A DNA stretch of 64,000 nt from Phallusia mammillata (lineage: Eukaryota), in contig OZ281501.1 in assembly GCA_965637545.1 (NCBI GenBank), positions 11,532,001 to 11,596,000 of the forward strand, read 5' to 3'. The notes beneath the pieces are model-generated. The model ran no database searches, was not told where the DNA came from, and was given only the letters and a program-made list of their open reading frames with translations. Positions 10,105 to 64,000 of this stretch are shown here, piece after piece (within the stretch, counting starts at the first letter, position 1; each line of letters begins with the position of its first letter). The position numbers were made by a program, and so were the translations under genes.

Positions 10105-10731
10105 TGTTACGTCGTTTTCGCCAACTGTTGTGAACATAACTTTGCCCAGCAAAACGTATAACAATTGTCCTGTGACGCAACAGTTAGTGTTCCATTGCGT
10201 GACAATTAATGTTCTAATGCGTGACGTCAATTGCCTGTGTACTGTGTATGTTGCAATCATTTGTAACTTGCCTCGTGGTGTACGTTTGTAAACTGCTGAC
10301 AGGCATAATTTGAATTGAAGCCATCAATCTAAACTTTGATACCTTTATTTAGCAGCTAGAAAGTATAAATAAATTGCTGAGTTGATAAAGCTGCATTTGT
10401 GAATCATTTTGCTGGTAAGTTTGGCTTTGTACTGTAATGTGAAGTTTTGTTCTAAAACTGTAAATGTTTGGTTATTTGTGCAGGATTTGTTCGGCCTTTA
10501 AAACATCATTAAATACCAAAACCCCTGTGGCCAAACAGTCGGTATGTTTACTTGTTGTGTTTCGAGTGCGATTTGTGCTTTATACGTTTTCGTTTTCATT
10601 CGCAGAAAAACCGGAATTGACCATACCATTAAAACGAATTGTCGTTCCTTTATGGTGTCCGCGTTTTTTATTGAGCCACATTGTGTGACGTTTTCGTGAA
10701 AACAGGGGAACACGCGACAGAAAACGTTACA
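10105..10731 (+). repeat. 5' LTR
   Basis: TG...CA ends; TATAAATA at 10364; ATTAAA at 10508. I found no differences from the 3' LTR by eye, and the ORF-track translations of both copies are identical at a constant 6487-bp offset. Confidence 0.95.
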
Positions 10732-10790
10732 TAAAAGTTTTTCGACTGGCCGACTGTCAATTGTCTAGTACCAACGCAATCACGACGAAG

Positions 10791-16487: not shown

Positions 16488-16580
16488 ACTGTTTGCGATG
16501 TTCATTTTCGTTCGTTTTGTTCGGTATATATTCAACGACGTTTTGTGTTTTAGAATGTATGCTCCCCTGGAGATACATTC

Positions 16581-16590
16581 GGGTGGGGGT
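16581..16590 (+). promoter_or_regulatory. Polypurine tract (plus-strand primer)
   Basis: gggtgggggt immediately upstream of the 3' LTR start at 16592. Confidence 0.75.
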
Positions 16591-16591
16591 A

Positions 16592-17218
16592 TGTTACGTC
16601 GTTTTCGCCAACTGTTGTGAACATAACTTTGCCCAGCAAAACGTATAACAATTGTCCTGTGACGCAACAGTTAGTGTTCCATTGCGTGACAATTAATGTT
16701 CTAATGCGTGACGTCAATTGCCTGTGTACTGTGTATGTTGCAATCATTTGTAACTTGCCTCGTGGTGTACGTTTGTAAACTGCTGACAGGCATAATTTGA
16801 ATTGAAGCCATCAATCTAAACTTTGATACCTTTATTTAGCAGCTAGAAAGTATAAATAAATTGCTGAGTTGATAAAGCTGCATTTGTGAATCATTTTGCT
16901 GGTAAGTTTGGCTTTGTACTGTAATGTGAAGTTTTGTTCTAAAACTGTAAATGTTTGGTTATTTGTGCAGGATTTGTTCGGCCTTTAAAACATCATTAAA
17001 TACCAAAACCCCTGTGGCCAAACAGTCGGTATGTTTACTTGTTGTGTTTCGAGTGCGATTTGTGCTTTATACGTTTTCGTTTTCATTCGCAGAAAAACCG
17101 GAATTGACCATACCATTAAAACGAATTGTCGTTCCTTTATGGTGTCCGCGTTTTTTATTGAGCCACATTGTGTGACGTTTTCGTGAAAACAGGGGAACAC
17201 GCGACAGAAAACGTTACA
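16592..17218 (+). repeat. 3' LTR
   Basis: 627-bp direct repeat of 10105-10731, followed by the TSD ctgtc. Confidence 0.95.
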
Positions 17219-19927: not shown

Positions 19928-22900
19928 ATGGCCCCAGTTTATATCTTACGTGCTGTGATTGTAACATTAATGGTCCTGACAACACATGTCCTGGCACAAA
20001 GTGCAACTACTAGCAGCAAAGGTAAGTCAATTTGTGCACAGTGATACCTGCGACAGCACGAGACGGTGTCATCTTTTCCAATTATATCGTGATAACATTA
20101 CTCAAGATCAACGGTTTTCGAAATTTAAGAAAGTCGCCTCATTTGTCGCCTAAGGCCATTGAAAGTCAACACGCTTTATTCTGCATTGTAAAATTTTCAG
20201 GTTCCCAATGTGTGTAGACATTAAAAAGACTATACTTTAAATTCCCTATAGCAATGAGCAACATTTGCAAAATTTGACAAAAGAAAAAACGTCACGTCAT
20301 CACCAAAGTCATGGACTTGTTGTCTGTAATCCATGATGCCTAACTTAGGTCTGCACACAAGTTGTTATAATTCTTCACAACAATCATTTATACCATCATA
20401 TCGTAGCAAGCAGCGATGCTACGAAGCAACCGCCTCTTTAGATTAGCTAATAGAAAGCAGCTGGTTTCGTATGCCGCCCAAGCTTCGGTATTGTTCTAAC
20501 CTTTTAGATCAATCATTAACCACTGTCCATGTGGATTATATTGTCTGTTTCCGCTTACTTGTGCCGTGATAGATTTTCTCCCACTTTGGCCGTGTCTCAA
20601 CTCCTGTGCAAATGCGTAGTGAATCCCTGCATGTACATACGACTACTTGTTGTGTCAAAAGAAGTTTAAGAGAAAAGTGTTTTTTTTTATTTCTGCTAAT
20701 TCGGACGTTGAGCGTTGCTCTCTCGTCAACGCCTTCAACGCAAACTTGACATTTTGCCCCCATCCCTATGTGATAAAACCAGGTCGGTCTTTCCGACTTT
20801 GCGGTATTTTCTAAGATCAAGGCGAGTTAAAAGTTACTATGTATTAACATTGTTCTGAAAGTACTTCTCATTAACCGAACTTTGCGACAAACACATCGAA
20901 TATGACGCATTTGACATTCGCGGCGGGACAAAAGCTATAACGATAAACGATTTTTGGGAATGAATCATGCTTACGATGCCAATATGCTTTGTAACAAAGG
21001 TCAACTCGGTGTTTACGACGTAATAAACCCTACCCCGCCTTTGTAATGTACAAGGTCATATATTAACTTATGTTTTTGCTTGTGCAACAGTAACATCTAC
21101 TTGTGCTGCTGCCACCGGTTGGTCGTATTCATCATCAGCATCGGCCTCAGCGTCCGCATCGGGTAGTGCTTCCTCGAGCTCATCGTTTTCCGTCAGTGGG
21201 ATCTGTGCTCAAGCGAAACTACCAAGCGACTGCATAGTTGCGCACCCGCATTGTCAGTGGTGTGCACAACCGGTAAGTGTTTGGCCCCAACATCCCATCC
21301 CTCTTGCCTAATCAAGCGTGTATCACGTGACTATTACGGGGTTGCCTTACGACCAGCACTATGCTCTGTGGCTACGCCCATGTTGCCGAGTTACTTCGTG
21401 AAAGCACTTGGCAGAAGCCTGGTTTGCAGTAGGTAATGCGCCTATAGATGTCTCGTGTTTGTGGGTAACGCATGGGCAGGTTTTGCACCAAGTATTGCAA
21501 GGCGGTTTTGCCTCAATACGCCCCAGGCATTTTAACGGCTACCTAACCGCTGTCGACAAGAAGCAACAACACTTCGATGATTTTGACAGAGCCTTGTTTT
21601 TCACTTTATCGTATTCATGTTACCGATTTAAAGAATAAATAGTTTAAACATTATCAGATGCAATTTTTTTTATTGCTCAAAATTTTTACTGTCGCAAGTA
21701 GAAAATAACTGCAAGTTGTTGACATATTAAATTGGTAGCAACCTAAAGTATTGGTATTATCATACATAATAATGATAAAAGTATGTATAGTTTTTTTTAC
21801 CTTAAACAACCTCTTGAATGTGTATTGGTGTTATTCCGGAATTAAACGATCTGTATCCATATAATTACAGCGTGTACGACTGGCGCATAGCTTTCGTACG
21901 TGTTTTGTGGATTGCTCAGCGGTTTGTAACAAGTACTTGCTGCATTTCAAGCCACCGTCGCATATTTTCAACGCATTGTCATGGAAACGAACAGCTTTTG
22001 CTTTGATTATAGGTTTTAGTGGTTTTGTTTACAAACGCGCGTTTACGGCAGCACTGTCCATGTATAATGCTTGAGGCATGTTACACCGACCGTCCTCTTA
22101 TGACAAATGGAATTCTTCAGTTCAAGTAAAGCGCTTTAGGCTTACATCGTTGATTCGTCAATATGCAAAGACCTTCAAGCACATTTTTATGTCTTAAGTT
22201 TGTGTACACTATATTCTAATGCATTAAAGAGAAATAAATCAAACTTTGTCACAAAAAGGGTCGTTTAAAAGAAGTTTTGTTTTTATTTCAGGACTTCAGC
22301 GGCCAACGTTGCAATCTGCACCGAATCCTGAAGAAGCACGAGTGCAATGACATTCAATACATAGAATCACAATACACACTTAACGCTGCCAACGAACTGA
22401 AACGATTTAACCATGAATTTGGGATGGTAAATTCAAAACACCAATAAAACGTTTATGGCATTATGGTCTTTAAATACGAAAAACAGAATCCTGAATGGTT
22501 ATCTGTCAAGAGATATGCCATATGATGCCAATACATCAATGAATTGAACGACTTTTATAACGCAGCCTTCTGAAATAAAATTATGTTTGGCATACGTAAT
22601 GTAAACTGTACGTTTATTTTTTTCACCCAGGCCCGCATTCGAATTGGCGACTCCCTTTTCATTCCCTTCCGAATCAAAGAACCTGAAGTGTACCCGGTTG
22701 ATTTTTACTATCTTATGGATGTGTCGTACAGTATGAAGGATGATTTGGAGGCGGTCGTCACCCTCGCACAGCTGTTAGGTTTGTCACGCGCTTCAACTGT
22801 CTGTTCTTTCCCCCTGTCTGTCTCACTCTCTTGAGTAGACGAAGCAATTTCATGCATTGCCATTGCGCCTATCACTTGGTGACTGTCATACTACGGAGTG

Positions 22901-25900
22901 ACAGCTGTTAAAGGAGAATGGCATGCCGGGATGCAAACAAAATTAACTTGTATTATGTTTGTAATACTACCAAAATAAAGTCGACTTAAAGGCTCCATAC
23001 CCGTTCTTACTTGACTTTTCTGTAAATTTCGAAAGCTTCTGGCCAACTCAGTATCTAATGAATATAGTGTTGTGGCCAGGCATGTTTTTTTAACTTTCTT
23101 TTATTTTCAACCAATATCTAACATATACAATAAATGACAAAAAAACAATGGTGAATATTGCCATGGATTGTTTTTGTCTCATAGTGCTCCAGTACATATT
23201 AAATATTGCGGAATTATTTACAGTGAAGACGCTGCAAGATTTAACAAAGGGAGGAACCGGAAGTGTTAAACTTGGATTTGGAAAATTTGTCGACAAAGTC
23301 CAAAGTCCCATGACGCAAATGACTCAATACAAGTTAGTATGAAAGCCAGGGAAACAACTGCAAATGATTTAGTAGTCCGGTTGCAAACGATGCATTTGCG
23401 GCTTTTTTCTTCACTGCGTTCGGAATGTGTTACACTGACGTGCTTGAGCACTTCTGTCTATAACCGCAGGAATTTTAATTAATGGGTTGTGATATGTATT
23501 GATCGGCCGAATCCATTTTCTTCTTATCAAAACTAATTCTAAATACTCATATCTCAAAATACGTACTCCTTGTTCTGCAGACTGAAAACTTTAAAAAGTC
23601 TGAAGTCATCCACCGTTTTTTATGTTTAGATTTATATATTTTTGCCAAAGTAATAGGCATCGTCAGTATCTTTTTCAAACATTTTTCTGCATTGACACTT
23701 TAAACATCGAACTTTATATGATTGATAAAAACAATGTTATGATTATGCATCTTGTGACTTGCTTTCTGCCAAGTTAAATACCTCAATATATTTACTTCCT
23801 AATTTCCAAACGTGAGCACAACGTATTAAAACCCATTTAATTTATAAGCATTCAACACCAGTTGAGGTTTACGAATTGGAACACTTGAAATAGCAAATTA
23901 CTTTTTTCAGGTTACGTCATCCTTATGGGACGGTCACGGATTCGCCGTTTCTCTTTAAGAACGTGGTCAACCTGACAACTGATGTGGCGCATTTTCAAGA
24001 GGTTCTCCGCCACGAAAACGTTTCTGGTAACTTGGATCCACCAGAGGGCGCGCTCGATGCCATGTTGCAGGTAATCCAATGCAAGGATCTGATTGGCTGG
24101 AGAGGTAACGCACTTCGCTTACTGATGATTGCAACTGAATCAGCTTACCATTATGCTGCTGATGGGTCGGGATACCTTGCTGGTATTTCGAAATCGAACG
24201 ACGGAAAATGTCACACTGGATACGACGGAAGGTAAAAAATGTGCAAAAAGAATGAACCAATTTGACATGGTCTTCTAAATTGCTTGAGGACTATTTTGCT
24301 AACTTATTGTATGGATGCTGTTTAAGTATGTTTGGCCCCTTTCTTACATTTAAAGTTGGTTTTAACAACTAATTGTCAGCCACCTTTCCTTACTATACTC
24401 AATATACTCAATATGCATGATACGTTGTATCAATATAGAAGAAAAGTAATTTCGGCACATGGTTTTCATTGGACAATTTTCCCATGGATTTATTTTAGTA
24501 TTATATGTTCACCATTGTAGTTACCTAAAAACAAATGACGTTTTGGGTTTTCTGTAGATACGTAGGTGCAGAGGATCAGGATTATCCAACAGTAAATCAA
24601 GTGGTCCGAGCTCTTGAAGAAAAATCAATCACTCCTATATTTGCCATTGGCAGCACGTACGAGGATTTATATCGGGTATGTGAAGCGTTCGCAGCAAACA
24701 ATCGTAAAAATCATTTTTTAAGTAGACAAGTTTACTACTTCTCATAAAATCCTGGTACAAATCCGATCTAACTGTTTTGATATTTATCCTTGATTTAACG
24801 AACCTGATAATTTGGTCAACAGCATATGTCGGAAGAAGTATTCCGCGGTTCAACTTGGGGTGTTTTGGCGAGAGATTCCAGTAATGTGGTGGATCTTGTC
24901 CGCGAAGCTTATCTGCAGATCGCCGGTACGTACAAATCATCAACACCTATTACTGTTATACCTATATCATACTGCGTCTGTGTACTAGCTCTGGGTTTTT
25001 GAAATATTTTATCAACTGAAATTACCAAAAGTTTTTTAAAACGTATGCTGGATTGGATTTTTAGTCTATTTGTTCATTGTCGTTACAAAAATAATGATTT
25101 GTCCAATAAACTGGATGGTCACTGTGGTTGTAATTGCCTAATCAACATTCAGTAACTAAATGGTCTTGTAAAACCAAAAGTCGTTTCCGTTTATGACGTA
25201 AGATTTGGTACAACATCTATCTTTCACGGCATTGGATTTTAATTAATACATAAAACTCCAATTTGCATGCAACTCATTTGGACAGTTTACTTTTTCACTT
25301 GCCTTTTTTTATTAATTTAACTATGTCGTTTTCCTACTTGTTTAGGCAAACAAGAACTTGTAACAACGAACCCCGACGCAGATATACTTTGTCCTTGGTA
25401 TCAAGCTACAACTCCAAGCAATGTCGAACTCACTTTTCCTGCACATTCCACTCTTGTGAAAGATCTAAAATCCGGAAGCGAGGTAAGCTGTCATGTTTTG
25501 TTGCCTGTTTTCCAGTAAGATTTAAGTAAGACTTTCATGGCTATTGCATAACACAATTAGAAGCCCCGGTACGAATCAGAAATTTCGTTGCAGTTAAGCC
25601 TGATTTAGGCCCAAAAGTTAAATGTCCAATGGTGACACAAAATTGACCTAATGTGAAGGCAGGCACAGATCAGGCCCGGCTTATAATATCTCAAGTCCCG
25701 AAAAACCCTACCTGACTTACTACTCTGATGTGAACTCAGTTGTATAGTGTTGTTAGTGAAAGTTTTACTCCTATACCTGTAATTCAATATTTGCATTTTC
25801 GTGCAGGTCCATTACAAGTTGTGGCTTGCTGCCAACCGTGGTGCGTGCGCTGAATTCGGCGAATGTCACGTGGGTAACGTCGAAGTAAAGACGAGACAGT

Positions 25901-28351
25901 ATGACGACAACTTGGTGATCAACACAACCGTTCTTGCTGCATTTGGATGCGCCGCTACAGTTGATGTGAATAGAGTTTCTTGTGTTACAAGTAGAGAATA
26001 CGGGGATTTGGTTCAGGACGGAATTTAGATTAGGAAAAGACGAATCTGTTTATGTTTTTTTTTAATCCTACCCGTATCATTTGGAGCTAAACCTTGCAAC
26101 GACCACGTGAACTTCGCCAGGTTATAAGTTAATAATTAATCCCCATTCCGACAAGCAAATGCATGATAGCGGCGCTTAAAAGTTGCCACCGTATGTTTTC
26201 TTGTAAACTTTCAGGTTCCAAATTACAAGCCTTGATTTTGTATATCGCAGATCGCAAGTGCTATTTGTAACGGCCAGGGCGATTTTACGTGCGGAATTTG
26301 TATTTGTGATGCCGGTTGGACGGGCGCGGCCTGTGCTCAACGAACCGTGGCAATTGGATGCGTTCAACCTGGTTCGCTCGACAAATGCTCAGGTCTGTAC
26401 ATTGCTTCACTGGATGAACTTTAGTCAGATTGTATTCGTTTATTCCATCCAGTGTATAAAACGTAATGCCCTTAGAATCCTATACAATAACAAAGAAATT
26501 TAAAAATGTTGTCACAAATTTTCTTCCAATGCCTTTTCTCCTAAGTCTTGTTTTAAACAATGTGACTTTATCTGCCCAGACCATTTTATATGACTGTGAT
26601 ATATCCATCGCCATACTTTATTTTTAAAAAAATCTAAAAGCCCTAGTGAAGCTGATATTTATAAATTGTTCCGACAAATCCCGCCAAATTGGCCACTGTG
26701 GATTCCAGATTATCAGTTGATCCAACTTATTGTGTGTTTGTTTGTGCAGGGAGGGGCCGGTGCTTAAGTGACCAGTGCCAGTGCAACCAGGGCTACCAGC
26801 ACGGGAAGTCGAAAATCTACGGCGATTTCTGCCAGTGCGACGAGTGTCCAAAGCAAGCCGGATTACTTTGCTCCGGCAACGGAATGTGAGTTTTGTTTGT
26901 TTCACTTTCTCGAGCAACGCAAACGCTAATCGGCTTATGGCTGTGATTGAATTGGATAAACGAGCTTGGTGAAATGTAAACAAACTAAAAGAGATTTTTA
27001 AGACCTACACGGTGTGTAATGCAGCGTCTCTGGTTCTGCCATTAAAAAATCAACTTATAAACGTTGAATTTTGATCAAACTGCTATAAAACTTTTGTTTG
27101 TTTTTTATATCTAATTGTCTTATAATGTCCTATCAGTTCAGTTTAATGACATGGGCGTTACCAGTTATGTGGGTTCAGTAAACACAAGAAAATGATATGG
27201 ACTTACATTATACAGCAAAACTTTAACAATTACGACTATAGTACGGGAAAAATTAAAACGAAACTTGGTAACTCTTCAAGTTAAACGACAAAATGTTTTA
27301 CAATAAAAATATATTCGTTGTTTTTGTAGCTCAAATAGCATTAGTGAACTCAGATTTTTAGAGTTTCTTTTATTTTCGCAGAGCAACAAAAGTGGGCCCT
27401 GAATCTTGTTCGTGTGAATGCGTCTGCAATCCTGATTGGACCGGAAGCGACTGTGGTTGTTCTCAACGGAACGACTCCTGTATAGGACTCGACGGATTAG
27501 TTTGCTCCGGTAACGGACGTTGCGAATGCGGAACCTGTGTGTGCACCCCTGGTTCGAAATTCGGAGGTCCGACGTGTGGAGACTGTATTACGGTGAGCTA
27601 TGTTTAAGTAAACCCTGTATCTATCTGTAACTGCTACACATTAATCAATTGTTGTCAAAATATGGATAAATGTACATGTTTAGTCGTCACTCGTCACCAA
27701 AAAATCTGTTTATCCTACTGTGAAAACAATTTATTTTCGTAACTTTTTGTAGATATTGTTGTGGTTTAAATGCTGAATAACAAACTTATGCTTTACTTAA
27801 GCATTTGATAAACTGACTACCACTATTTGTAGGATTGTCCATCCTGTGCCGAGTTCCAAAACTGCATCCAGTGTATCATGCACGGCAGTGGCCCCTACAA
27901 CCAAACTTGCGAAATCAACTGTCCGAAATATTCGGTAAAGCCGGTCGACACCAACTCAATGAGCGAAGGTAAAATATGTCATTTCAAAAATGTGTAGGCG
28001 GGTATCAAATATTTTTTAAACATGCGCGACACCAATGACTCATATGTGACTTATCTGGGGATCGTGCGGTTGGATTTCGACTTGATGCATCACTTTTAAG
28101 GTGGTCGACCATAATGTGAAACGGAAATACCAAAGAAAATGATTTAGCTTAACTGTATATTGTTGTATTACGATGTGTAAAATTATTATAGCTTGTTGAA
28201 ACTTGTGGCGTGTTATGTTTTGTAGAAACCATAAAGCCGGAAAATGGAGAGGTTCTGTGTGCGGCTATTGACGAGAGCGACAATTGCAAGTTCTACTATT
28301 CATACCAAGTTAAACCGGGCGGGATTGAGTATCATGCCGAGGAAGATAAAC
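19928..28351 (+). CDS. Integrin beta ectodomain exons (15)
   Basis: Exons 19928-20021, 21091-21272, 22292-22426, 22631-22778, 23224-23332, 23911-24231, 24558-24675, 24823-24925, 25346-25482, 25807-25965, 26251-26392, 26750-26885, 27382-27592, 27833-27968, 28226-28351. Motifs: PSI [51 protein letters not shown], QDYPT, and Cys-rich CSGNGRCECGTCVC. Confidence 0.95.
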
Positions 28352-55300: not shown

Positions 55301-58300
55301 ACCAGTGCAACTCATATCTACCATGTACAGAAATCCACTGAAATTTACTGTTGAAATCAGCGATCCCTCAGATGGAGCAGATCTCGGAAACAATCCCCAT
55401 AGTCACGTGACTTTACAGCCTACTGATGAAGAACCAGAGGGAAGGCTGACTTTTATATCGGAGTCTGGCCAACCAAGTACTGAAGTGAATGCGAATGATT
55501 GCGAAACTGTCACGATCGATGTTGGGCGAATGGACGGAGTTGGTGGAGACAAAACTGTGCATTTTAGAACAAAAGAGGGTTCTGCAAAAGACGGAAAACA
55601 TTTCAAGGGATGCGAGGGAACCTTAGTTTTGAAAGATCGTGAATCGAAAGGAAGCATTTTCATTCCTCTTCTACCTGAAGTTTATCGCGATACATTATTA
55701 TTTGACGTTGAAATTCACGACCCTAGTGCACCTACCGATAAAGTAACAACCACGATTAAACTTTTACCCACAGACAATGAACCCGAAGGTGAGATTTCGA
55801 TACCAGATGATGCTGGAGTTGAAGTAGATGCAACAAAAGACAAATCAGTGATGATTCCCGTGAAAAGAGTTAATGGTGTCGGTGGTGAAAAGATTTTGAA
55901 ATACAAAACAAGCGATGGCAGTGCTAAAGCTGGAATTCACTACGAGTCTGCGGAAGGCGATATTAGATTGAAAGATCGCCAAGCAGATGATAATGTGAAA
56001 ATTAAGCTGCTGCCAGCAATGTACAGAGATACATTGGACTTTAATGTAATCATTGAAGACCCAAGTCAGCAGACAGAAGTTACTGCACCAGTCAAGCTGT
56101 TGCCAACTGACACCGAACCGCCTGGTAAGCTTACTTTACCTGATTGTAATGATCTTGTTTCCAATGCCAATGATGTTGACGTCATAAAAATTCCTGTGAG
56201 GCGAGTTGAAGGTGCAGGAGGTGAAGTTTCTGTTGCAGTCAAAACACACGATGATACCGCATTGGATGGAGTCCACTATGTAGGCATAGATGGTAGAGTG
56301 ACTTTGAAGGACAGACAAACTGAAGCTGAAATACCAGTGAAGCTCCTATCTACCATGTACAGAAACCCACTAAAATTTACTGTTGAAATCAGCGATCCCT
56401 CAGATGGAGCTGATCTCGGAAACAATCCACATACTCACGTGACTTTACAGCCTACTGATGAAGAACCAGAGGGAAGGCTGACTTTTATATCGGAGTCTGG
56501 CCAACCAAGTACTGAAGTGAATGCGAATGATTGCGAAACTGTCACGATCGATGTTGGGCGAATGGACGGAGTTGGTGGAGACAAAACTGTGCATTTTAAA
56601 ACAATAGAGGGTTCTGCGAAAGACGGAAAACATTTCAAGGGATGCGAGGGAACCTTAGTTTTGAAAGATCGTGAATCGAAAGGAAGCATTTCAATTCCTC
56701 TTTTACCTCAAATTTTCCGCGATACATTGACATTTGACGTTGAAATTCACGACCCTAGTGGACCTACCGATAAAGCAACCACAACTATTAAACTTTTACC
56801 CACAGACAATGAACCCGAAGGTGAGATTTCGGCACCAGATGATGCTGGAGTTGAAGTAGATGCAACAAAAGATAAATTAGTGATGATTCCAGTGAAAAGA
56901 GTTCATGGTGTCGGTGGTGAAAAAAATTTGAAATACAAAACAAGCGATGGCAGTGCCAAAGCTGGAATCCACTACGAGTCTGTTGAAGGCGATATTATTC
57001 TCAAAGATCGTCAAGCTGACGAAAATATCGAGATAAGGCTGCTGCCAGCAATGTACAGGGACACATTGGCTTTTAGCGTAATCATTGAAGATCCAAGTCA
57101 GCAGACAGAATTTACTACACCAGTCAAGCTGTTGCCAACTGACACCGAACCGCCTGGTAAACTTACTTTACCAGATTGTGACGATCTTGTTTCCAATGCT
57201 AATGATGAAAACGTCGTAAAAATTCCTGTGAGGCGAGTTGAAGGTGCAGGTGGTGAAGTTTCTGTTGCAATCAAAACACACGATGATACCGCATTGGATG
57301 GAGTCCACTATAAAGGCATAAATGGAAGGGTGACTTTGAAGGACAGACAAACCGAAACTGAAATACCAGTGCAGCTTCTGTCTTCCATGTACAGAAATCC
57401 ACTGAAATTTACTGTTGAAATCAGCGATCCCTCAGATGGAGCTGATCTCGGAAACAATCCACATACTCACGTGACTTTACAGCCTACTGATGAAGAACCA
57501 GAGGGAAGGCTGACTTTTATATCGGAGTCTGGCCAACCAAGTACTGAAGTGAATGCGAATGATTGCGAAACTGTCACGATCGATGTTGGGCGAATGGACG
57601 GAGTTGGTGGAGACAAAACTGTGCATTTTAGAACAAAAGAGGGTTCTGCAAAAGACGGAAAACATTTCAAGGGATGCGAGGGAACCTTAGTTTTGAAAGA
57701 TCGTGAATCGAAAGGAAGCATTTTCATTCCTCTTCTACCTGAAGTTTATCGCGATACATTATCATTTGACGTTGAAATTCACGACCCTAGTGCACCTACC
57801 GATAAAGCAACGACAACGATTAAACTTTTACCCACAGACAATGAACCCGAAGGTGAGATTTCGATACCAGATGATGCTGGAGTTGAAGTAGTGGCAACAA
57901 AAGACAAATCAGTGATGATTCCAGTGAAAAGAGTTCATGGTGTCGGTGGTGAAAAGATTTTAAAATTTAAAACCAGCAATGGGAGTGCTAAAGCTGGAAT
58001 TCACTACGAGTCTGCGGAAGGCGATATTAGATTGAAAGATCGCCAAGCAGATGATAATGTGAAAATTAAGCTGCTGCCAGCAATGTACAGAGATACATTG
58101 GACTTTATTGTAATCATTGAAGATCCAAGTCAGCAGACAGAATTTACTACACCAGTCAAGCTGTTGCCAACTGACACCGAACCGCCTGGTAAGCTTACTT
58201 TACCTGATTGTGACGATCTTGTTTCCAATGCTAATGATGATAACGTCGCAAAAATTCCTGTGAGGCGAGTTGAAGGTGCAGGAGGTGAAGTTTCTGTTGC

Positions 58301-61300
58301 AATCAAAACACACGATGATACCGCACTGGATGGAGTCCACTATAAAGGCATAGATGGAAGGGTGACTTTGAAGGACAGACAAACTGAAGCTGAAATACCA
58401 GTGCAGCTTCTGTCTACCATGTACAGAAATCCATTGAAATTTGCTGTTGAAATCAGCGATCCCTCAGATGGAGCTGATCTCGGAAACAATCCCCATACTC
58501 ACGTGACTTTACAGCCTACTGATGAAGAACCAGAGGGAAGGCTGACTTTTATATCGGAGTCTGGCCAACCAAGTACTGAAGTGAATGCGAATGATTGCGA
58601 AACTGTCACGATCGATGTTGGGCGAATGGACGGAGTTGGTGGAGACAAAACTGTGCATTTTAGAACAAAAGAGGGTTCTGCAAAAGACGGAAAACATTTC
58701 AAGGGATGCGAGGGAACCTTAGTTTTGAAAGATCGTGAATCGAAAGGAAGCATTTTCATTCCTCTTTTACCTCAAATTTTCCGCGATACATTGACATTTG
58801 ACGTTGAAATTCACGACCCTAGTGCACCTACCGATAAAGCAACCACAACTATTAAGCTTTTACCTACAGACAATGAACCCGAAGGTGAGATTTCGGCACC
58901 AGATGACGTTGGAGTTGAAGTAGATGCAACAAAAGATAAATCAGTGATGATTCCAGTGAAAAGAGTTCATGGTGTCGGTGGTGAAAAGATTTTGAAATAT
59001 AAAACAAGCGATGGCAGTGCTAAAGCTGGAATCCACTACGAGTCTGCTGAAGGTGATATTACACTGAAAGATCGCCAAACTGATGGTGATGTGGAAGTAA
59101 AGCTGTTGCCGGCAACATACAGAGATACACTGGACTTTACTGTAACTCTTAAGGATCCTGGTCAAGACAAAGAAGTACCTTTTAGAGTAAAGCTTTTACC
59201 CACTGACTGTGAACCAGCTGGAAAGATGACAATGTCCGACGTGGTGCAAGTTAATGCCAATGACGTTGATGTCGCTATGGTTACTGTACAACGGGTCGGT
59301 GGAGTTGGTGGACAAGTATCTGTTGCAATAAAAACTGCTAATAATAGTGCTGTTGATGGCGTCCATTACAAGGGCATGGACGGCCGCGTAACATTAAAGG
59401 ACAGACAGCAGAATGTTAAATTGCCAATAGCCCTTGTCCAAGAAAGCTACCGAACACCACTCAAGTTTTATGTTATAATGGATGACCCAATCGGAGAGGC
59501 AGAAATTTCTGAAGACAATAAATGCACGGTGACACTTTTACCAACGGATACAGAACCACAAGGATTTTTAGGATTTTTAGACAGGCAAAGTGAAGAAATT
59601 TCGGTCAACGCCAACGAGATTGGACGCCTTGAAATCCCAGTGAAAAGGTACTCTGGCATCGGAGGAACTGTAACGGCGTCGTACAACACCATCGATGGGT
59701 CGGCAAAAGCTGGAAAACACTACTTGCCGGTTTCGGGAACTTTAACTTTTGGAGATCGTCAAGACAGCGACGAAATATCGATAACTTTGTTACCAGAAAC
59801 GTATCGCAACGAGCTTGACTTTGAACTTGAAATACAGTCTAGTGACGACAAGAAAACATCAAACATGAAAATACTTCTAGCACCAACTGACACCGAAACA
59901 CCAGGCGAACTGACCTTGCCTGACAATGATGTACTTGAAGTTAGTGCCAAGAATTGCAACAGTCTTGGAATTCCGATAAGACGCAAGAACGGGGCAGGTG
60001 GCGAAGTTTCCTTCCGTGTGCGAACCATAGACGGAACAGCTCAGGACGGAAAACACTACAGAGGGATCAACCGTCAAATTACCCTCAAAGACCGTGAAGA
60101 GTTTGTTGAGGTAGAAGTCCCTCTACTCCCACTCCTTTACCGCGACAAACTCGACCTGGTTGTGGAAATTGACCAACCACAGGGCGGGGCTACCCTCGGT
60201 GACGTCAGCAAGTCAACTGTGACGTTTTTGCCGACTGACGACGAGCCAGCTGGGAACTTGACTTGGCCCGGGTTAGACAATGACGATACAGTTACGTGCG
60301 ATGGAAGCACTGTCAAACACGTCGTTGTGCCGATTAGACGCGTTAATGGTAAGGGCGGGCCTATCTCAATCTCATACCGCACTAGGGATGATACCGCAAA
60401 AGCAGATGAACATTACGTACCGACTTCTGGCAACTTGACTATTGGTGACAGGAAAACTGAAGGCGAAATACGCATTCCAATAAAACCTAAAATGTACAGA
60501 AGCGAGTTGAAGTTTTTCCTGGAGATTGGCCGGCCTGACGGCGGAAAAAGCGAAGTACAAATTGTCCTGCAGCCAACTGATAAGGAACCGAGGGGCGAGG
60601 TCGTGTTTAAAGCAGATAAGGATCTGGTCAAAACGAATGCAAATGAAGCGGACAGTGTCGATATTAATTTGGCAAGGATTGGTGGCGTTGGCGGAGAAAT
60701 GCATCTCCATGTTAAGACTGAGGACGGAAGTGCAAAGAGAGATAAGCATTATACCAGCGTTGAGAGAAATTTTGTGATCAAAGATCGCGAACAGGAAGCT
60801 CAAATCAAAGTTCCATTGCTCAAAGAAATGTACAACGACCCCAAGTCCTTCTACGTGGTATTGACCGATCAACACACACAAAAATCAACTAAAATGACCG
60901 TCATGCTCTTTCCTACTTACATTGAACCTCCTGGTGAGATTACATTCGAAACCGATAAAATAAAACTCGGTGAACCTGAAGATAGAAAGGTGATTATTCC
61001 TCTCAAACGCGAAAATGGATGTGGTGGCAAAGTTGGAATGAGCTATGAAACAATACCAGGTAGCGCAAAAGCAGGAGTGCATTTTGAACCTGCGTCTGAA
61101 GTGCTTGAACTTGAAGATGGGGCAAAGGATTGTGCAGTTGAGATAAAACTTCTTAATGCAAAGTATAGAAGCGAACTGGACTTTCATGTCAGACTCTTTG
61201 ATCCTGTGGGTGGGATACAACTTAAGCAATCTGATATTGAAATCAAACTTCCTCCTACAGACACAGAACCGACTGGTAAATTGTTTTTTGATTCTCCAGA

Positions 61301-63931
61301 TGGCGGTCTAAGCTTTGATACCGATGATTCAAAAGTCCTGAAAATTCCGTTAATACGCAAGGGTGGCTGCGGCGGTGACGTTTATATTGATTACGCCACG
61401 GCTGACGGTACGGCCACAAGCGGAGAACATTACGTTGCCACGTCGGGAAAGGCCGTTGTTGGCGATAGGGAGACGAAAGGACACATTGAAATTGATACCG
61501 TAGCATGCAAAAGAATTGAAGAGAAGTTTTTCACTATCCTCCTAACTGACCCTGAAAATAATCGTTCAGAGCAAGTCCAAGTCACATTGCAGCCCAATGA
61601 AGAACCGACAAGCTATGAATTTGACTGTAAACTGTCTAAAATAAAGGCTTGTGTCCTGGATGACGATGTCGTACGTATACCCATACGCAGAAGCAGCGAC
61701 AAATGTCAAAACTCAATTCCCCTGTCGTACAAAACAAAACCGGGATCTGCCAAACCCGACAAGCACTACACTACTAGCAAGGGCTTGGCGCAAATTCCAG
61801 AGGACTCAGACCAATGCACTATTGAGATCCCTCTTAAGAAATCGGTATACAGGCGTTCTGTGAACTTTTTTGTACATGTGAGAAATCAGATGGGTATAAT
61901 TTACGTTGTTGAGGTTGTTCTTAGTGCCACAAAGGAGGATCCACCTGGAATACTTGAGTTTTCATCACCCAATTTCACTTTCCCTGCCTTCACTGGCACA
62001 TCAGGAAACCCACAGATTTCAATCCCTATAATGCGCATGTTCGGTTCAGGTGGCGAAGTGTGCGTGGACTACTTTACCCGAGACAACACAGCTATCAACG
62101 GCAAACATTACGAGGAATCAAGCGGACAAGTTACCTTTGAAGACGGACAGACTGTTAAGGATATTGATATCAAACTGCTGCCATACAATCAGTACACAAA
62201 AGATCTGTCTTTCGTTATTGAACTTGGCTTAGCAAGTGGAGGGGCTGAAGTTGAAGGAAACTATGAGACAGAGGTTGAGCTTCGTGCTCCTCTTGACGAA
62301 AACGATCCCGGGATGCTTGGATTCGAATCCACACGGACTGTCATCTCTTCAACGCGTCTACAACAGAAGAAGAATAAACCAGTGAAAATTGAGATTCCGG
62401 TTCGTCGGACGATCGGTTGTCGTGGAGCAGTTGCTGTCGATTTTTTCACTCGTGACAATACAGCAGTCTCGGGGCAGCATTACGTTGAAACACAAGGCGA
62501 ATTGCCGTTTGCTGCTGGTGAAATCCGCAAAAGCATTAAAGTCGATCTATTGCCGGGTTCTCACTACAAAAAGCAATGCTCATTTACTGCCGAGCTCGGG
62601 GCCGCTACCGGTGATGCTGAAGTGGGTTTGTACGAAACAGAGGTGGTTTTAAACCCGCTGAGAAGGAGATCATCTGCAAGCAGTTCCAGCAGTTCGTCAA
62701 GCTCATCTAGCAGTTCATCCAGTTCGTCCGACGAAGATGTGTTTCGGTCATCGCACACAGAAATTGTGAGACGGGAGATTGGAAGTACTGCTGTGATGAC
62801 TGAACATAGTGAAATAAAAACTGTTACATTCACAACTTACCAGACTCAAACAACTTACGAGACCAGCATACACCGCCATCAAGAATTCGAAGGTAAATCT
62901 AATTTTTCACACACTCTGTTTTAATTGTGTTTTTGCATTATGGGTACATAAAGTTACCTTGTGTATTGCGGGTTTTGGAAGGCCTGTGTAAATTACTTAA
63001 TTGATTTTTCAACCAAAGTGAAGCTTAACACAGAAAATGGTCAACCTCTTTGAGTATGAAATGTATTAAGTAATTATAAGTAACAACACTATGTTCTAAT
63101 GTGAGCCAAATGGATAAAGTCGACTTTTTGTAGTAAATGTATTAAGACTATTGTTAAATCAAACTGTCAGATTTTAAGCTTCTCTAAATGAATTGAAATA
63201 ACAATAACTTTTTCTCTTTCACAGATGATGGAACAGCTGGTGAAATCGGATTTCCAGACGAGCATTATGAATTTGAACTTGGTGTTGGCACCGAAGCTGT
63301 GGTGCCGGTTGCTCGTACTTTTGGTCTGACCGGAGAAGTCACTGTTGATTGGTTTACTCGGGAAAACACAGCGGTTGCTGGTAGAGACTTTATTGAGTCC
63401 GAGGGGCAGATTACCTTCGCTCATGGTCAGCCTTCTGCGGAGATCAAGGTCCCGTTAGTAGATCCACGAAAAACCGCAGGCGAAAAATTCACTGATCGGA
63501 GTTTTATCGTTGAGTTGGGCGAACCTGATGGGGGCGCAACTATGGCTCGCTACGAGACTAACGTAGTGATTTATGGCCCCCAAGGTGATTCCTCGGCCAG
63601 AAAAGGTTGGTTATATCAAACAAAATTGTAAAAAAGTGCACAGAAAGAATTAGCTCACACTTTGTTTACAAAATATACACAAAGAAAATATCATAAAAAC
63701 CATCGTACCAATACTCAATAATATGCTGGCAGTTAATCATTTTAGTCACAAAGTCTTCGTTTTTTTGCAATTTTAGCGTCTGGCGAGGATTCGAGCCCAG
63801 GTGAACACTTGTAGCGCCGCTTTGCTTTGGAAAATGCAATTTTTAAAATAAAAAACATAAAAAACATTGCATTTTCGTTAATTCGATTTTGTTTCACAGG
63901 CAAACATCGAGCTTCGTCCAGTCGAAAATAA
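19928..63931 (+). CDS. ITGB4: Giant integrin beta4-like subunit (~7,520 aa, 75 exons): signal peptide, PSI, hybrid, betaI, I-EGF, beta-tail, TM, then about 54 Calx-beta and 2 FN3 cytoplasmic domains
   Basis: Manual exon chaining in which splice phases match throughout (GT-AG except one or two GC-AG introns). Summed CDS is 22,566 nt = 7,522 codons ending TAA at 63929-63931. The symbol reflects similarity to beta4; orthology is untested. Confidence 0.8.
28485..28682 (+). CDS. Transmembrane and juxtamembrane exon
   Basis: YSLLIILWCILLFLLIGLILLCCWRCCVYVIDKEE; ends at the donor A|GTAAGC, phase 1, matching the next acceptor at 28929. Confidence 0.92.
28929..48791 (+). CDS. Multi-exon cytoplasmic array of about 21 Calx-beta domains
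   Basis: 46 small exons (57-297 nt) repeatedly encoding G.(I/V).F...(Y/F)......IPV.R..G..G...V.W.T.D.TA..G..Y....G...F.DG.....I.IP. Domain boundaries usually fall at phase-1 introns. Confidence 0.88.
33472..33705. mobile_element. hAT MITE (234 bp) in an integrin intron
   Basis: TIRs CAGGGGTCGGCAA / TTGCCGACCACTG; perfect TSD gtttaaat. Confidence 0.92.
42595..42807. mobile_element. hAT MITE of the same family as 33472-33705, opposite orientation
   Basis: Ends CAGTGGTCGGCAA / TTGCCGACCCCTG; shared gcggaccgg motifs inverted; TSD gtttatac / gtttacac. Confidence 0.88.
45973..47689 (+). mobile_element. Internally deleted Buster/Charlie (ZBED5-like) hAT transposon in an intron
   Basis: TIRs CAGTGATTCTCAAA / TTTGAGAACCACTG; TSD ttctaaac / ctcttaac (6/8). 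Remnants: BED finger (CIVC...RHLKQNH), PLSNNTI, LQVDESTD, FLSDLFDKLNNLNSSLQG, CEYGFSAL; several stops and frameshifts. Confidence 0.88.
48929..49270 (+). CDS. Fibronectin type III domain 1 (two exons: 48929-49089, 49150-49270)
   Basis: TW.P.....PVEGYKVTYW ... LDDLQPNTSYQVNVRPFNNVGDG. Confidence 0.88.
50128..50524 (+). CDS. Fibronectin type III domain 2 (two exons: 50128-50253, 50369-50524)
   Basis: VSWEPP..GGPVEGYKV ... LTALKPSTKYRVYVQPFNKIGY. Confidence 0.88.
52588..62892 (+). CDS. Giant 10,305-nt internal exon: 29 Calx-beta domains plus a Ser/Thr-rich linker
   Basis: Acceptor tttcag|CG at 52587/8 and donor AG|GTAAAT at 62892/3; open in one frame (ORF track 3441 aa); phase 1 at both ends. 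Confidence 0.9.
54747..59210 (+). repeat. Coding tandem array: 1,032-bp (344-aa, three-domain A-B-C) unit, about 4.3 copies
   Basis: Near-identical units; shadow ORFs recur at 55413, 56445, 57477 and 58509 (exact 1032-bp step). Confidence 0.95.
63225..63931 (+). CDS. Terminal exons: last Calx-beta (63225-63584), 24-nt micro-exon (63777-63800), stop exon (63900-63931)
   Basis: All phase 1 with AG/GT boundaries; predicted end ...ASGEDSSPGKHRASSSRK*. ATTAAA at 63995-64000 could be the poly(A) signal. Confidence 0.6.
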
Positions 63932-64000
63932 CCTTTGTATTACTAACTGTGTGCTTTGTAAATAACCTAGAAAAGCTACATACTTTACTTTACCATTAAA

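What the first reader, a model, noticed from the sequence alone, without database searches (positions are those of the whole stretch)
19928..63931. Giant-tailed beta4-like integrin: ~6,700-aa cytoplasmic rod of about 54 Calx-beta domains
Seen: a complete integrin beta ectodomain and TM helix spliced in frame to 59 further exons encoding about 54 Calx-beta and 2 FN3 domains (about 7,520 aa in total). Established: most beta tails are ~50 aa; human beta4 has a ~1,000-aa tail with 1 annotated Calx-beta and 4 FN3; the big known Calx-beta arrays (ADGRV1/VLGR1 with 35, FRAS1/FREM) are extracellular. Inference: an intracellular, titin-like Ig-fold spacer, possibly over 200 nm long, linking matrix adhesion to deep cytoskeleton in a hemidesmosome- or tendon-like junction. 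I know of no described integrin like this, but I cannot search to confirm novelty.
Basis: partly seen in the sequence, partly recalled or inferred. Interest (0 to 1): 0.95.

Follow-up and report, generated by a model that had tools for sequence, protein, structure and literature searches.

The report
Giant-tailed tunicate integrin beta4 orthologue
This is a real, transcribed sea-squirt (tunicate) gene for the counterpart of vertebrate integrin beta4, whose intracellular tail has grown to about 6,700 residues made of some 53 Calx-beta domains; relatives already sit unnamed or misnamed in databases, but I found no paper describing the giant tail.

Summary
A curated model has 74 exons and 7,506 aa, with no internal stop. 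It runs signal peptide, PSI, betaI domain (MIDAS DVSYS), I-EGFs, one TM helix, then 53 Calx-beta domains and 2 FN3. One 10,305-nt exon carries 28-29 of the Calx-beta domains. Spliced contigs from three independent studies join the TM exon to the first Calx-beta exon exactly at 28682/28929. One such contig is 13.9 kb, so this is a single transcript.

In a tree the ectodomain groups with Ciona and Styela proteins, sister to vertebrate beta4 (100/100). Predicted orthologues with the same layout exist: Ciona intestinalis "GPR98-like", 4,045 aa, and Styela clava LOC120348632, 4,606 aa. Ewan et al. 2005 named Ci_beta5 the beta4 orthologue and suspected a Calx-type tail. The architecture is therefore not unprecedented, only undescribed.

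New here is the doubling of the array, including a young 1,032-bp tandem array under purifying selection.

Orthologues end in a second FN3 pair that best matches human beta4 FnIII-1,2, the plectin-binding pair. Those exons probably lie beyond base 64000, so the stop at 63931 is doubtful.

The spacer-to-cytoskeleton function is inferred, not shown.

The parts
19928..20021 (+). Exon 1: start codon and signal peptide (MAPVYILRAVIVTLMVLTTHVLAQ...)
   Evidence: ORF list. Hydropathy scan. The length of RNA contig X1 implies about 194 nt of 5'UTR before this ATG.
21091..25482 (+). Nine exons for the PSI, hybrid and betaI (VWA-like) domains, with MIDAS DVSYS at residue 167
   Evidence: Pfam Integrin_beta on exon pieces. 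Exon-by-exon colinear tblastn with Ciona P0158 at 47-89% identity. DxSxS motif. The best full-length hits of the betaI exon are vertebrate beta4.
25807..28351 (+). Six exons for the I-EGF repeats and beta-tail domain
   Evidence: Pfam EGF_integrin, I-EGF_1 and EGF_2. RNA joints 27592/27833, 27968/28226 and 28351/28485.
28485..28682 (+). Transmembrane exon (LLIILWCILLFLLIGLILLCCW) plus a 40-aa juxtamembrane segment without NPxY
   Evidence: Hydropathy scan. This is the most conserved part of the protein: 85% identity to Ciona and 79% to Styela. No NPxY/NPxF anywhere in the protein.
28683..28928 (+). Phase-1 GT-AG intron that joins the TM exon to the first Calx-beta exon. This is the decisive junction.
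   Evidence: Sequence. Spliced out in contigs of X1, X2 and X11, from three studies. Present and unspliced in DNA run X9.
28929..48791 (+). Proximal rod of 21 Calx-beta domains (d01-d21) in 45 exons, most domains split over two exons. d01, d06 and d11 are variant domains with long acidic or Ser-rich inserts. There is a weak 5-domain super-repeat.
   Evidence: Custom HMM. One-to-one colinearity with Ciona (60%) and Styela (51%) in single ~3,280-aa HSPs. The 11 introns from 29051/29124 to 32903/33014 are confirmed by RNA joints, two of them GC-AG. Mean identity at a 5-domain offset is 0.31, against ~0.25 at other offsets.
45850..47725 (+). Longest intron (1,876 nt), holding transposon-like ORFs at 46502-47577. 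The ab initio 'exon' 47249-47512 inside it was rejected.
   Evidence: No counterpart in Ciona P0158, which is contiguous across this point. No Pfam hit.
48929..49270 (+). Internal FN3-a (two exons)
   Evidence: Pfam fn3. Conserved in Ciona, Styela and L001.
49480..50047 (+). Degenerate Calx-beta-like unit with a poly-Ser/acidic insert, lying between the two FN3 (two exons)
   Evidence: The Styela orthologue gives a partial custom-HMM hit at the same place, 3418-3541. Poly-Ser tract at residue ~3504.
50137..50524 (+). Internal FN3-b (two exons)
   Evidence: Pfam fn3 and FN3_DSCAM.
50669..51896 (+). Calx-beta d22 (variant with Ser-rich insert, two exons) and d23 (one whole-domain exon, 51537-51896)
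   Evidence: Custom HMM, E 1e-07 and 4e-13. Pfam's generic model misses d23.
52588..62892 (+). Giant exon of 10,305 nt (3,435 codons, intron phase 1 on both sides) holding about 29 Calx-beta domains (d24-d52)
   Evidence: Open frame. Pfam E 1.1e-250. Custom HMM. Canonical flanking splice sites, and skipping would give an in-frame GAT codon. A homologous single-ORF exon of 2,225 aa occurs in a related species, L001.
54750..59210 (+). Young tandem array inside the giant exon: about 4.3 copies of a 1,032-bp unit (3 domains), 87-99% identical, with a 2,064-bp higher-order pattern
   Evidence: Shift-identity profile. pN/pS between units is 0.24-0.37.
63225..63605 (+). Last Calx-beta domain (d53), one whole-domain exon followed by a usable donor (GAAAAG|GTTGGT)
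   Evidence: Custom HMM. 47.5% identical to the corresponding exon of L001 and 36% to the last Styela Calx-beta domains. Donor sequence.
63777..63931 (+). Doubtful terminal mini-exons (63777-63800, 63900-63931) and stop. Probably not the real 3' end.
   Evidence: They have only ab initio support and no similarity to L001 or Styela. In L001 the next conserved exons (an FN3 pair) lie 2.9-4.3 kb after the last Calx-beta exon, which here would fall beyond base 64000.

Best explanation
The region encodes the orthologue of vertebrate integrin beta4 (Ci_beta5 of Ewan et al. 2005) in an ascidian closer to Ciona than to Styela.

**Shown**
- A normal integrin beta ectodomain and a single TM helix are spliced in one mRNA to a 6,700-aa acidic tail.
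- The tail holds 53 Calx-beta domains, interrupted by one FN3 - Calx-like - FN3 module.
- The first 21 domains are one-to-one orthologous in three ascidians and as conserved as the ectodomain.
- The distal array is evolutionarily plastic (4, 5, 18+ or 32 domains according to species). Here it was enlarged by recent in-exon tandem duplication that remains under purifying selection.

**Inferred**
- By type I topology the tail is cytoplasmic.
- Most domains lack the acidic Ca2+-site residues, as does the beta4 Calx-beta domain, so the chain is most likely a cation-independent rod of Ig-like modules. At roughly 4-4.5 nm per domain it could reach about 200-240 nm if extended.
- From orthologues, the rod probably ends in an FN3 pair homologous to beta4 FnIII-1,2, the plectin-binding module. 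That pair is encoded just beyond this window.
- Together with a laminin-type alpha chain, the protein would then form a hemidesmosome-like anchor. The cytoskeletal (plakin/intermediate-filament) docking site would be held far from the membrane, at a distance set by the number of Calx-beta domains.
For: **One transcript.** GT..AG joints lie exactly at 28682/28929 and at 14 neighbouring introns. They are seen in contigs of X1 (13,926 nt), X2 (5,659 nt) and X11 (2,514 nt), from three studies, and are absent from DNA run X9. The contig coordinates match the model exactly, 2,265 nt over 27382-32667. The runs hold 0.35 of the sampled words, against 0.36 expected for exons only.

**Domains.**

**Orthology.**
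- Single HSPs of about 3,280 aa cross the TM helix: 60% identity to Ciona P0158 and 51% to Styela P0192.
- In the tree the tunicate clade has 100/100 support and is sister to vertebrate beta4 with 100/100.
- The best full-length hits of the betaI exon are lamprey, hagfish and teleost beta4.
- Ewan et al. 2005.

**Constraint.** Tail identity is 0.61/0.52 (to Ciona/Styela) against 0.63/0.54 for the ectodomain. Array units have pN/pS 0.24-0.37. The 22.5-kb reading frame is open.

**Ca2+ site.** Most domains have LLPxxY-R where NCX has DDD..E.

**Distal FN3 pair.** The Styela C-terminal pair hits human beta4 FnIII-1,2 (3F7Q, 3F7P, 1QG3) at E 7.5e-29 over the whole pair. The same exons lie downstream of the last Calx-beta exon in L001.

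**Colinear flanks with vertebrate beta4.** Lamprey beta4 45-1106 aligns with Styela 78-1111, and lamprey 1004-1340 with Styela 4062-4379.

**No talin-type motif.** There is no NPxY anywhere in the protein.
Against: - There are no data on tissue, subcellular position, partners or the shape of the tail. 'Rod', 'spacer' and 'plakin binding' are all inferences.
- The runs are only guessed to be RNA. The guess rests on intron-free GT..AG joints.
- Only 27300-33200 was laid on reads. Inclusion of the giant exon in mRNA is inferred from the length of contig X1, which would end about 1.95 kb into it, near 54,541.
- The exon is frame-symmetric and could be skipped.
- The terminal FN3 pair is not in the window.
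- The array's copy number could be mis-assembled.
- A few domains (d02, d03, d07, d12, d16) keep acidic clusters, and the tail carries a net charge of -358 with poly-Ser tracts. Ca2+- or phospho-dependent behaviour is therefore not excluded.
Confidence: 0.72

Rival explanations
1. The full 7,500-aa form is a minor isoform. The 10.3-kb exon is a skippable cassette, and the main product is a ~4,070-aa integrin with about 24 Calx-beta domains, like the Ciona and Styela predictions.
For: The exon has phase 1 on both sides and a length of 3 x 3,435 nt. Skipping gives an in-frame Asp codon and joins two whole-domain exons. Predicted Styela isoforms X2 and X3 differ by about 430 aa in the distal array.
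Against: The length of contig X1 implies that it continues about 1.95 kb into the giant exon and stops where near-identical repeats begin, as an assembler would. The array is under purifying selection. A related species keeps a 2,225-aa homologous exon. The end of Ciona model P0158 aligns about 375 aa into this exon.
Confidence: 0.2
2. The tail is not a passive spacer. It is a regulated or plaque-forming scaffold: acidic Calx-beta domains and poly-Ser loops bind Ca2+ or are phosphorylated, changing stiffness, or many tails pack side by side into a thick cytoplasmic plaque.
For: The tail has a net charge of -358 and four poly-Ser/acidic tracts of 11-20 residues, sited in loops of variant domains. 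Some domains keep a DD..E/D cluster. Each of the 21 proximal domains is conserved as strongly as the ligand-binding ectodomain, which is more than a mere spacer would need.
Against: Most domains, including all of the young array, replace the NCX-type acidic site with LLPxxY-R. The beta4 Calx-beta domain is reported to be stable without cations (Alonso-Garcia et al. 2009, as cited in PMC11670116). No binding data exist.
Confidence: 0.2
3. The domain count is inflated by assembly. The 87-99% identical 1,032-bp units at 54750-59210 are mis-assembled, and the true gene has fewer, or more, of them.
For: High-identity tandem repeats are error-prone. The transcript contig appears to break at the edge of the array.
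Against: The units differ by 4-9% with a consistent 2,064-bp higher-order pattern, and the frame stays open. That pattern suggests real, distinguishable copies. Even without the array, about 40 domains remain.
Confidence: 0.12
4. These are two neighbouring genes, a short-tailed integrin and a separate Calx-beta protein, wrongly chained together.
For: A read-through stop lies at 28768, just after the TM exon.
Against: The TM exon is spliced to the Calx-beta exon in contigs from three studies, and no contig retains the intron. Independent gene predictions in Ciona and Styela cross the same junction. The juxtamembrane stretch is the most conserved part of the protein.
Confidence: 0.02

Closest known systems
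Vertebrate integrin beta4 (ITGB4; human 1,822 aa, lamprey P0003 1,826 aa)
   Same: - It is the sister clade in the ectodomain tree.
- It has one TM helix and, in this protein, no NPxY motif.
- The tail begins with a split variant Calx-like unit followed by a canonical Calx-beta. Lamprey 45-1106 is colinear with Styela 78-1111, with weak HMM hits.
- Calx-beta followed by FnIII-1,2 is colinear with the last Calx-beta plus terminal FN3 pair of the tunicate protein.
   Different: - Vertebrates have 1-2 canonical Calx-beta domains, against 25-53 here.
- Vertebrates have no internal FN3 - Calx-like - FN3 module.
- Vertebrates have a connecting segment and FnIII-3,4, for which no separate tunicate counterpart was found.
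- The tail here is about 6-7 times longer.
Ciona intestinalis 'G-protein coupled receptor 98-like isoform X2' (P0158, 4,045 aa), the Ci_beta5 locus of Ewan et al. 2005
   Same: Orthologue, with 60% identity over 3,279 aa in one HSP and a nearly identical TM sequence. The layout is the same: 21 Calx-beta, FN3, Calx-like, FN3, then more Calx-beta.
   Different: The prediction ends inside a Calx-beta domain, at a point about 375 aa into the window's giant exon. It has 25 domains. It is named after ADGRV1 although it has an integrin ectodomain and no 7TM hit in Pfam. The 2005 paper could not establish the tail.
Styela clava LOC120348632 (P0192 4,606 aa; P0193 4,177 aa), 'uncharacterized protein'
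   Same: Orthologue, 51% identical over 3,280 aa, with the same 21 + FN3 module layout.
   Different: It has only about 5 distal Calx-beta domains. It is complete at the C-terminus, showing the terminal FN3 pair and a Q-rich C-tail of about 230 aa that the window does not reach.
ADGRV1/VLGR1 and FRAS1/FREM Calx-beta arrays
   Same: Long tandem arrays of Calx-beta domains (one search lists ADGRV1 as a distant hit).
   Different: Those arrays are extracellular and are attached to 7TM/GAIN or CSPG modules. Identity is only 21-24%. Here the array follows a type I TM helix and is therefore cytoplasmic.
NCX/CALX Ca2+-binding domains CBD1 and CBD2
   Same: The same fold family and a cytoplasmic location. 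They are the best PDB sequence hits for a single array domain (3US9, 8JP0).
   Different: The acidic Ca2+-coordinating cluster (DDD..EE) is replaced in most domains here.

Membership tests
Integrin beta subunit | betaI (VWA-like) domain with a MIDAS DxSxS motif | tested here: met
   Pfam Integrin_beta on three exon pieces, E 6.5e-33 to 5.6e-08. DVSYS at residue 167.
Integrin beta subunit | Signal peptide, PSI, I-EGF repeats and a single C-terminal TM helix (type I) | tested here: met
   EGF_integrin, I-EGF_1 and EGF_2. PSI_integrin in orthologues that are colinear with the window exons. Only two hydrophobic segments, the signal peptide and residue 757.
Integrin beta4 clade | The ectodomain groups with vertebrate beta4 rather than with other beta chains | tested here: met
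   IQ-TREE on 22 ectodomains places the window, Ciona and Styela (100/100) sister to lamprey, hagfish and teleost beta4 (100/100). Few other vertebrate paralogues (beta1-like, beta7) were included. Ewan et al. 2005 reached the same placement for Ciona.
Integrin beta4 clade | Long cytoplasmic tail holding Calx-beta followed by FN3 domains, with no NPxY talin-binding motifs | tested here: met
   53 Calx-beta and 2 FN3 after the TM helix. No NPxY/NPxF.
Integrin beta4 clade | FnIII-1,2 pair, the plectin actin-binding-domain docking module | tested here: inconclusive
   Present in Styela, where the best PDB hits are 3F7Q/3F7P/1QG3 at E 7.5e-29, and in L001 downstream of the last Calx-beta exon. Not found within the window, which ends 395 nt after the last Calx-beta exon.
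Integrin beta4 clade | Pairs with a laminin-type alpha chain and binds plectin or intermediate filaments in hemidesmosomes | not testable with these tools
   No interaction or localisation data. Ewan et al. 2005 report two laminin-clade alpha chains in Ciona.
Calx-beta domain (PF03160) | Match to the family profile | tested here: met
   E 1.1e-250 in 27 stretches in one exon. 15 of the 55 tail exons outside the giant exon match on their own.
Calx-beta domain (PF03160), Ca2+-binding subtype (NCX CBD1/2) | Acidic Ca2+-coordinating cluster in the E-F loop (DDD..E..E) | tested here: not met
   Alignment of all 53 domains shows a partial acidic cluster only in about d02, d03, d07, d12 and d16. d27-d50 have LLPxxY-R. 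This is a sequence-level test only.
ADGRV1/GPR98 (the name given to the Ciona orthologue) | 7TM adhesion-GPCR core with GAIN/GPS, LamG/pentraxin and EPTP repeats | tested here: not met
   Pfam on P0158 gives Integrin_beta, PSI, EGF, Calx-beta and fn3, and no 7tm_2, GPS, Laminin_G_3 or EPTP. True ADGRV1 hits carry PF00002, PF13385 and PF03736.

The most novel reading that the evidence does not exclude
The common ancestor of tunicates and vertebrates already had a beta4 integrin whose plakin-docking FN3 pair was separated from the membrane by a Calx-beta chain. Tunicates kept and lengthened that chain (25 to more than 53 domains, about 100-240 nm) as a tunable molecular ruler for an unusually deep hemidesmosome-like plaque. 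Vertebrates collapsed it to one or two domains. The length would still be evolving by in-exon tandem duplication and perhaps by cassette splicing. If so, this is the largest integrin subunit and the longest intracellular Calx-beta rod known to me, and a natural experiment on how tail length sets the geometry of an adhesion.
Probability: 0.3. Interest if true: 0.8.

Novelty: new variant of a known kind. Interest (0 to 1): 0.62.

Why it matters
Integrin beta4 is the odd integrin that couples laminin adhesion to intermediate filaments. Its origin and the role of its Calx-beta domain are poorly understood.

A beta4 orthologue in the sister group of vertebrates is a striking contrast. Its single Calx-beta domain is replaced by a conserved chain of 25-53 domains, placed between a conserved membrane-proximal segment and, in relatives, a conserved FnIII-1,2-like pair. 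It gives a concrete hypothesis: the Calx-beta module is a length element. This is testable in Ciona, where transgenesis and CRISPR are routine.

The finding also corrects database names (the Ciona protein is not a GPR98/ADGRV1 homologue). It answers a question left open in 2005, whether Ci_beta5 has a long tail. It offers a clean example of a protein rod growing by tandem duplication inside one exon while under purifying selection.

The architecture can already be seen in automatic annotations of two species, so the discovery is one of recognition and extent rather than of a new kind of molecule.

Tried and rejected
- **Tandem Repeats Finder** on 52000-63999 found nothing, because the 1,032-bp period exceeds its 500-bp limit. 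A shift-identity profile was used instead.
- **First HMM too narrow.** The HMM built only from the young array missed most proximal domains. It was broadened by iteration on 832 domains.
- **Five ab initio filler exons dropped:** 20201-20209, 38036-38074, 42742-42807, 43271-43327 and 47249-47512. All are frame-neutral and lack a Ciona counterpart. For 43271-43327 Ciona has 15 unaligned residues there, so it remains uncertain.
- **Two GT donors were wrong.** RNA joints showed GC donors after 31467 and 32384.
- **Long Calx-beta proteins P0157, P0230 and P0231** (4,300-6,100 aa) were checked as possible orthologous giant exons. They are about 23% identical, with secreted bacterial-type ends, and are not orthologues.
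- **Pfam gave no hit** for the d23 exon piece 51479-52057 or for the TM exon.
- **The window's last 450 nt** show no similarity to L001 or to the Styela C-terminus.
- **The internal FN3 pair** does not single out beta4 in PDB searches: PTPRF and fibronectin score higher.
- **Literature searches** found no description of the giant tail. Terms covered integrin + Calx-beta + tunicate, Ciona + Itgb4, Ciona + 'receptor 98' and hemidesmosome + Ciona.
- **Protein searches for annotated integrins of 2,225-8,060 aa** found only the Ciona and Styela proteins.
- **Structure prediction was not run.** The tool returns no coordinates, so it could not test rod geometry.
Full report
**1. What is in the sequence**

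The window has no N and looks like a compact animal genome: GC about 0.40 and short introns.

On the + strand from 19,928 onward, stop-free pieces carry three things:
- integrin beta VWA, integrin EGF and fn3 signatures;
- a clear TM segment (LLIILWCILLFLLIGLILLCCW);
- one 3,456-aa open stretch (52554-62921) that Pfam scores as Calx-beta at E 1.1e-250 in 27 stretches.

An HMM built from that stretch resolves 28-29 head-to-tail domains of about 116 aa. No Calx-beta signal lies on the minus strand.

**2. Gene model**

I chained GT/AG-bounded open exons by dynamic programming, using codon and splice-site scores retrained on the result. I then curated the chain in two ways:
- Five frame-neutral filler exons with no counterpart in the Ciona orthologue were removed.
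- Two donors were moved to GC sites, and a third exon's end moved from 33184 to 33196, as transcript contigs demanded.

The result has 74 exons, 22,521 nt and 7,506 aa, with no internal stop. There are 73 introns of 58-1,876 nt (median 205).

Only the signal peptide and one helix at residue ~757 are membrane-like. The protein is therefore type I, and everything after residue ~790 should be cytoplasmic.

A custom Calx-beta HMM, iterated on 832 domains from this protein, its orthologues and other Calx-beta proteins, finds 53 domains. The layout is:
- d01-d21;
- FN3, a degenerate Calx-like unit, FN3;
- d22-d23;
- about 29 domains in the giant exon;
- d53 in its own exon.

Pfam's generic model sees Calx-beta in 15 of the 55 tail exons outside the giant exon taken singly, and fn3 in 4.

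**3. One transcript or two genes?**

The splice 28682|GTAAGC...TTTCAG|28929 is canonical and in frame.

Runs holding 0.35 of the sampled words of 27300-33200 exist in several studies. For exons only the expected share is 0.36.

Three of these runs, from three studies, were laid on the stretch. Their contigs (13,926, 5,659 and 2,514 nt) skip every intron at GT..AG, or at GC..AG in two cases, including exactly 28682/28929. A DNA run covers exons and introns without joints.

The contig coordinates match the model to the base: 2,265 nt between 27382 and 32667. No contig retains the intron that would give the short read-through product.

The runs are only guessed to be RNA. Intron-free joints at consensus sites are not expected from genomic DNA.

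From its length, the 13.9-kb contig should start about 194 nt before the ATG and end about 1.95 kb inside the giant exon, near 54,541. That is close to where the near-identical repeats begin at 54,750. This last point is an inference, because only 5.9 kb could be laid.

**4. What it is**

- *Nearest relatives of the betaI exon.* Searched against 1.84 billion representatives, its best full-length relatives are lamprey, hagfish and teleost integrin beta4, at 47-57% identity.
- *Ciona.* A search with the giant exon returned a 4,045-aa Ciona intestinalis protein called 'G-protein coupled receptor 98-like isoform X2'. Its Pfam content is Integrin_beta, PSI_integrin, I-EGF, Calx-beta and fn3, with no 7TM.
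- *Styela.* A search with the Ciona ectodomain among proteins of 2,225-7,079 aa added only Styela clava LOC120348632 (4,606 and 4,177 aa). A further search up to 8,060 aa added nothing.
- *Colinearity.* The window's protein aligns with both in single ~3,280-aa HSPs that run from the ectodomain through the TM helix into the 21st Calx-beta domain, at 60% (Ciona) and 51% (Styela) identity. tblastn shows exon-by-exon colinearity.
- *Tree.* A maximum-likelihood tree of 22 ectodomains puts the three tunicate proteins together (100/100) as sister to vertebrate beta4 (100/100).
- *Literature.* Ewan et al. 2005 (PMC1145181) had already called Ciona Ci_beta5 the beta4 orthologue. They wrote that they could not establish whether it has the long tail, but saw short ORFs similar to the Na+/Ca2+-exchanger domain in 10 kb of 3' sequence, 'data not shown'.

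The window therefore holds the beta4 orthologue of an ascidian closer to Ciona than to Styela.

**5. Correction at the 3' end**

A 342-kb ENA assembly contig (locus L001) from a further relative carries, in order:
- the FN3/Calx-like/FN3 exons, 50-82% identical to the window;
- a single 2,225-aa ORF with 18 Calx-beta domains, the counterpart of the giant exon;
- a last whole-domain Calx-beta exon;
- then, 2.9-4.3 kb further on, three exons 41-75% identical to the Styela C-terminus.

That Styela region is a pair of FN3 domains plus a Q-rich tail of about 230 aa. Its best matches among all solved structures are human beta4 FnIII-1,2 (3F7Q, 3F7P, 1QG3), at E 7.5e-29 over the whole pair. 3F7P is, from my own knowledge, the complex with the plectin actin-binding domain.

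In the window the last Calx-beta exon ends at 63605 with a usable donor, and only 395 nt remain. Most likely the gene runs off the window and the protein is about 7,900 aa with four FN3.

**6. Homology map to vertebrate beta4**

- Lamprey beta4 residues 45-1106 align in one HSP with Styela 78-1111. That covers the ectodomain, the TM helix, a split variant Calx-like unit with a long insert, and the first canonical Calx-beta.
- Lamprey 1004-1340 (Calx-beta plus FnIII-1,2) aligns with Styela 4062-4379 (last Calx-beta plus terminal FN3 pair) at E 3e-38.
- The custom HMM also gives weak split hits just after the TM helix in lamprey, hagfish and teleost beta4.

Both flanks of the vertebrate Calx-beta domain are thus colinear with the two ends of the tunicate rod. 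Either tunicates expanded the chain or vertebrates collapsed it. Which happened is not resolved.

**7. Properties of the tail**

- *Conservation.* Between the window and Ciona/Styela, identity is 0.63/0.54 for the ectodomain, 0.85/0.79 for the TM helix plus juxtamembrane segment, and 0.61/0.52 for d01-d21. Domains d02, d03, d05 and d12 are the most conserved. The proximal rod is therefore constrained domain by domain.
- *Distal array.* It varies between species: 4 domains in the truncated Ciona model, about 5 in Styela, at least 18 in L001 and 32 here.
- *Young array.* It includes about 4.3 copies of a 1,032-bp three-domain unit at 87-99% identity, with a 2,064-bp higher-order pattern. pN/pS between units is 0.24-0.37.
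- *Super-repeat.* A weak 5-domain super-repeat marks d01-d15. The first domain of each super-repeat is a variant with a long acidic or Ser-rich loop.
- *Charge and motifs.* The tail has a net charge of -358 and four poly-Ser/acidic tracts. There is no NPxY anywhere in the protein.
- *Ca2+ site.* The NCX-type acidic Ca2+ site is kept at best partially in a few proximal domains. It is replaced by LLPxxY-R in d27-d50.

**8. Mechanism**

*Shown.* One mRNA links an integrin beta4-type ectodomain and TM helix to a very long, conserved, open-reading Calx-beta/FN3 chain.

*Inferred.*
- The chain is cytoplasmic, from topology.
- It is a largely cation-independent string of Ig-like modules. At about 4-4.5 nm per domain (my estimate, not measured here) it could span roughly 200-240 nm.
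- Its far end carries the FnIII-1,2-type module that in vertebrates docks plectin.
- The protein would then work as a beta4-type anchor between basal lamina and intermediate filaments or another deep cytoskeleton. The Calx-beta number would set the membrane-to-docking-site distance.

*Alternatives.* These are a regulated or plaque-forming scaffold, cassette skipping of the giant exon, and mis-assembled copy number. They are listed with their tests.

**9. Novelty and score**

Relatives with this architecture are present in public annotation, one misnamed and one unnamed, and the locus was flagged in 2005.

Seven full-text searches found no paper describing a beta4 orthologue with dozens of cytoplasmic Calx-beta domains. 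No annotated integrin of this size appeared in the protein collections searched.

I rate it a new variant of a known kind, interest 0.62.

Noticed in passing
window 10102-16888 (+): Apparently intact BEL/Pao-type LTR retrotransposon. Direct repeats of at least 300 nt and 100% identity lie 6,487 nt apart. A gag-like ORF (DUF1759) lies at 10761-11846. A 1,538-aa pol ORF (Peptidase_A17, RVT_1, Integrase_H2C2, DUF5641) lies at 11871-16487. Identical LTRs suggest a very recent insertion about 3 kb upstream of the integrin start.
   Followed up: partly
window 6458-8077 (+): Transposase-like ORFs with a DUF4371 hit (hAT/ZBED-type). Probably a DNA-transposon remnant.
   Followed up: partly
window 679-891 and 3163-3459 (-): Calcium-binding EGF exons (EGF_CA, EGF_3) of a different minus-strand gene that runs off the window's 5' end.
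   Followed up: partly
window 31468 and 32385: Two GC-AG introns, with donors GCAAGT and GCATGT, both used in transcript contigs from three studies. That is 2 of 73 introns in this gene.
   Followed up: yes
window 45850-47725: The longest intron of the gene (1,876 nt) holds transposon-like ORFs at 46502-47577 with no Pfam match. An ab initio exon predicted inside it was rejected.
   Followed up: partly
L001 10001-16678 (ENA ERZ25067576, contig ctg10113_30x_l, 342 kb): An assembly filed in ENA holds a long contig of a related tunicate-like animal with the orthologous gene. Its giant exon was called as a 2,225-aa 'protein' (P0156), with an internal duplication of about 7 domains, so the array expands independently in this lineage.
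   Followed up: partly
P0009/P0153 (teleost integrin beta4) residues 985-1209: The teleost beta4 has two canonical Calx-beta domains in tandem, whereas the lamprey protein shows one. All three vertebrate beta4 sequences tested give weak split Calx-like hits just after the TM helix.
   Followed up: no
P0154/P0147 (Branchiostoma, 2,658-2,761 aa): Amphioxus proteins carry an integrin betaI-like domain in the middle of the chain (residues ~1054-1146) of a much longer protein. In the tree this sits on a very long branch, unrelated to the beta4 clade.
   Followed up: no
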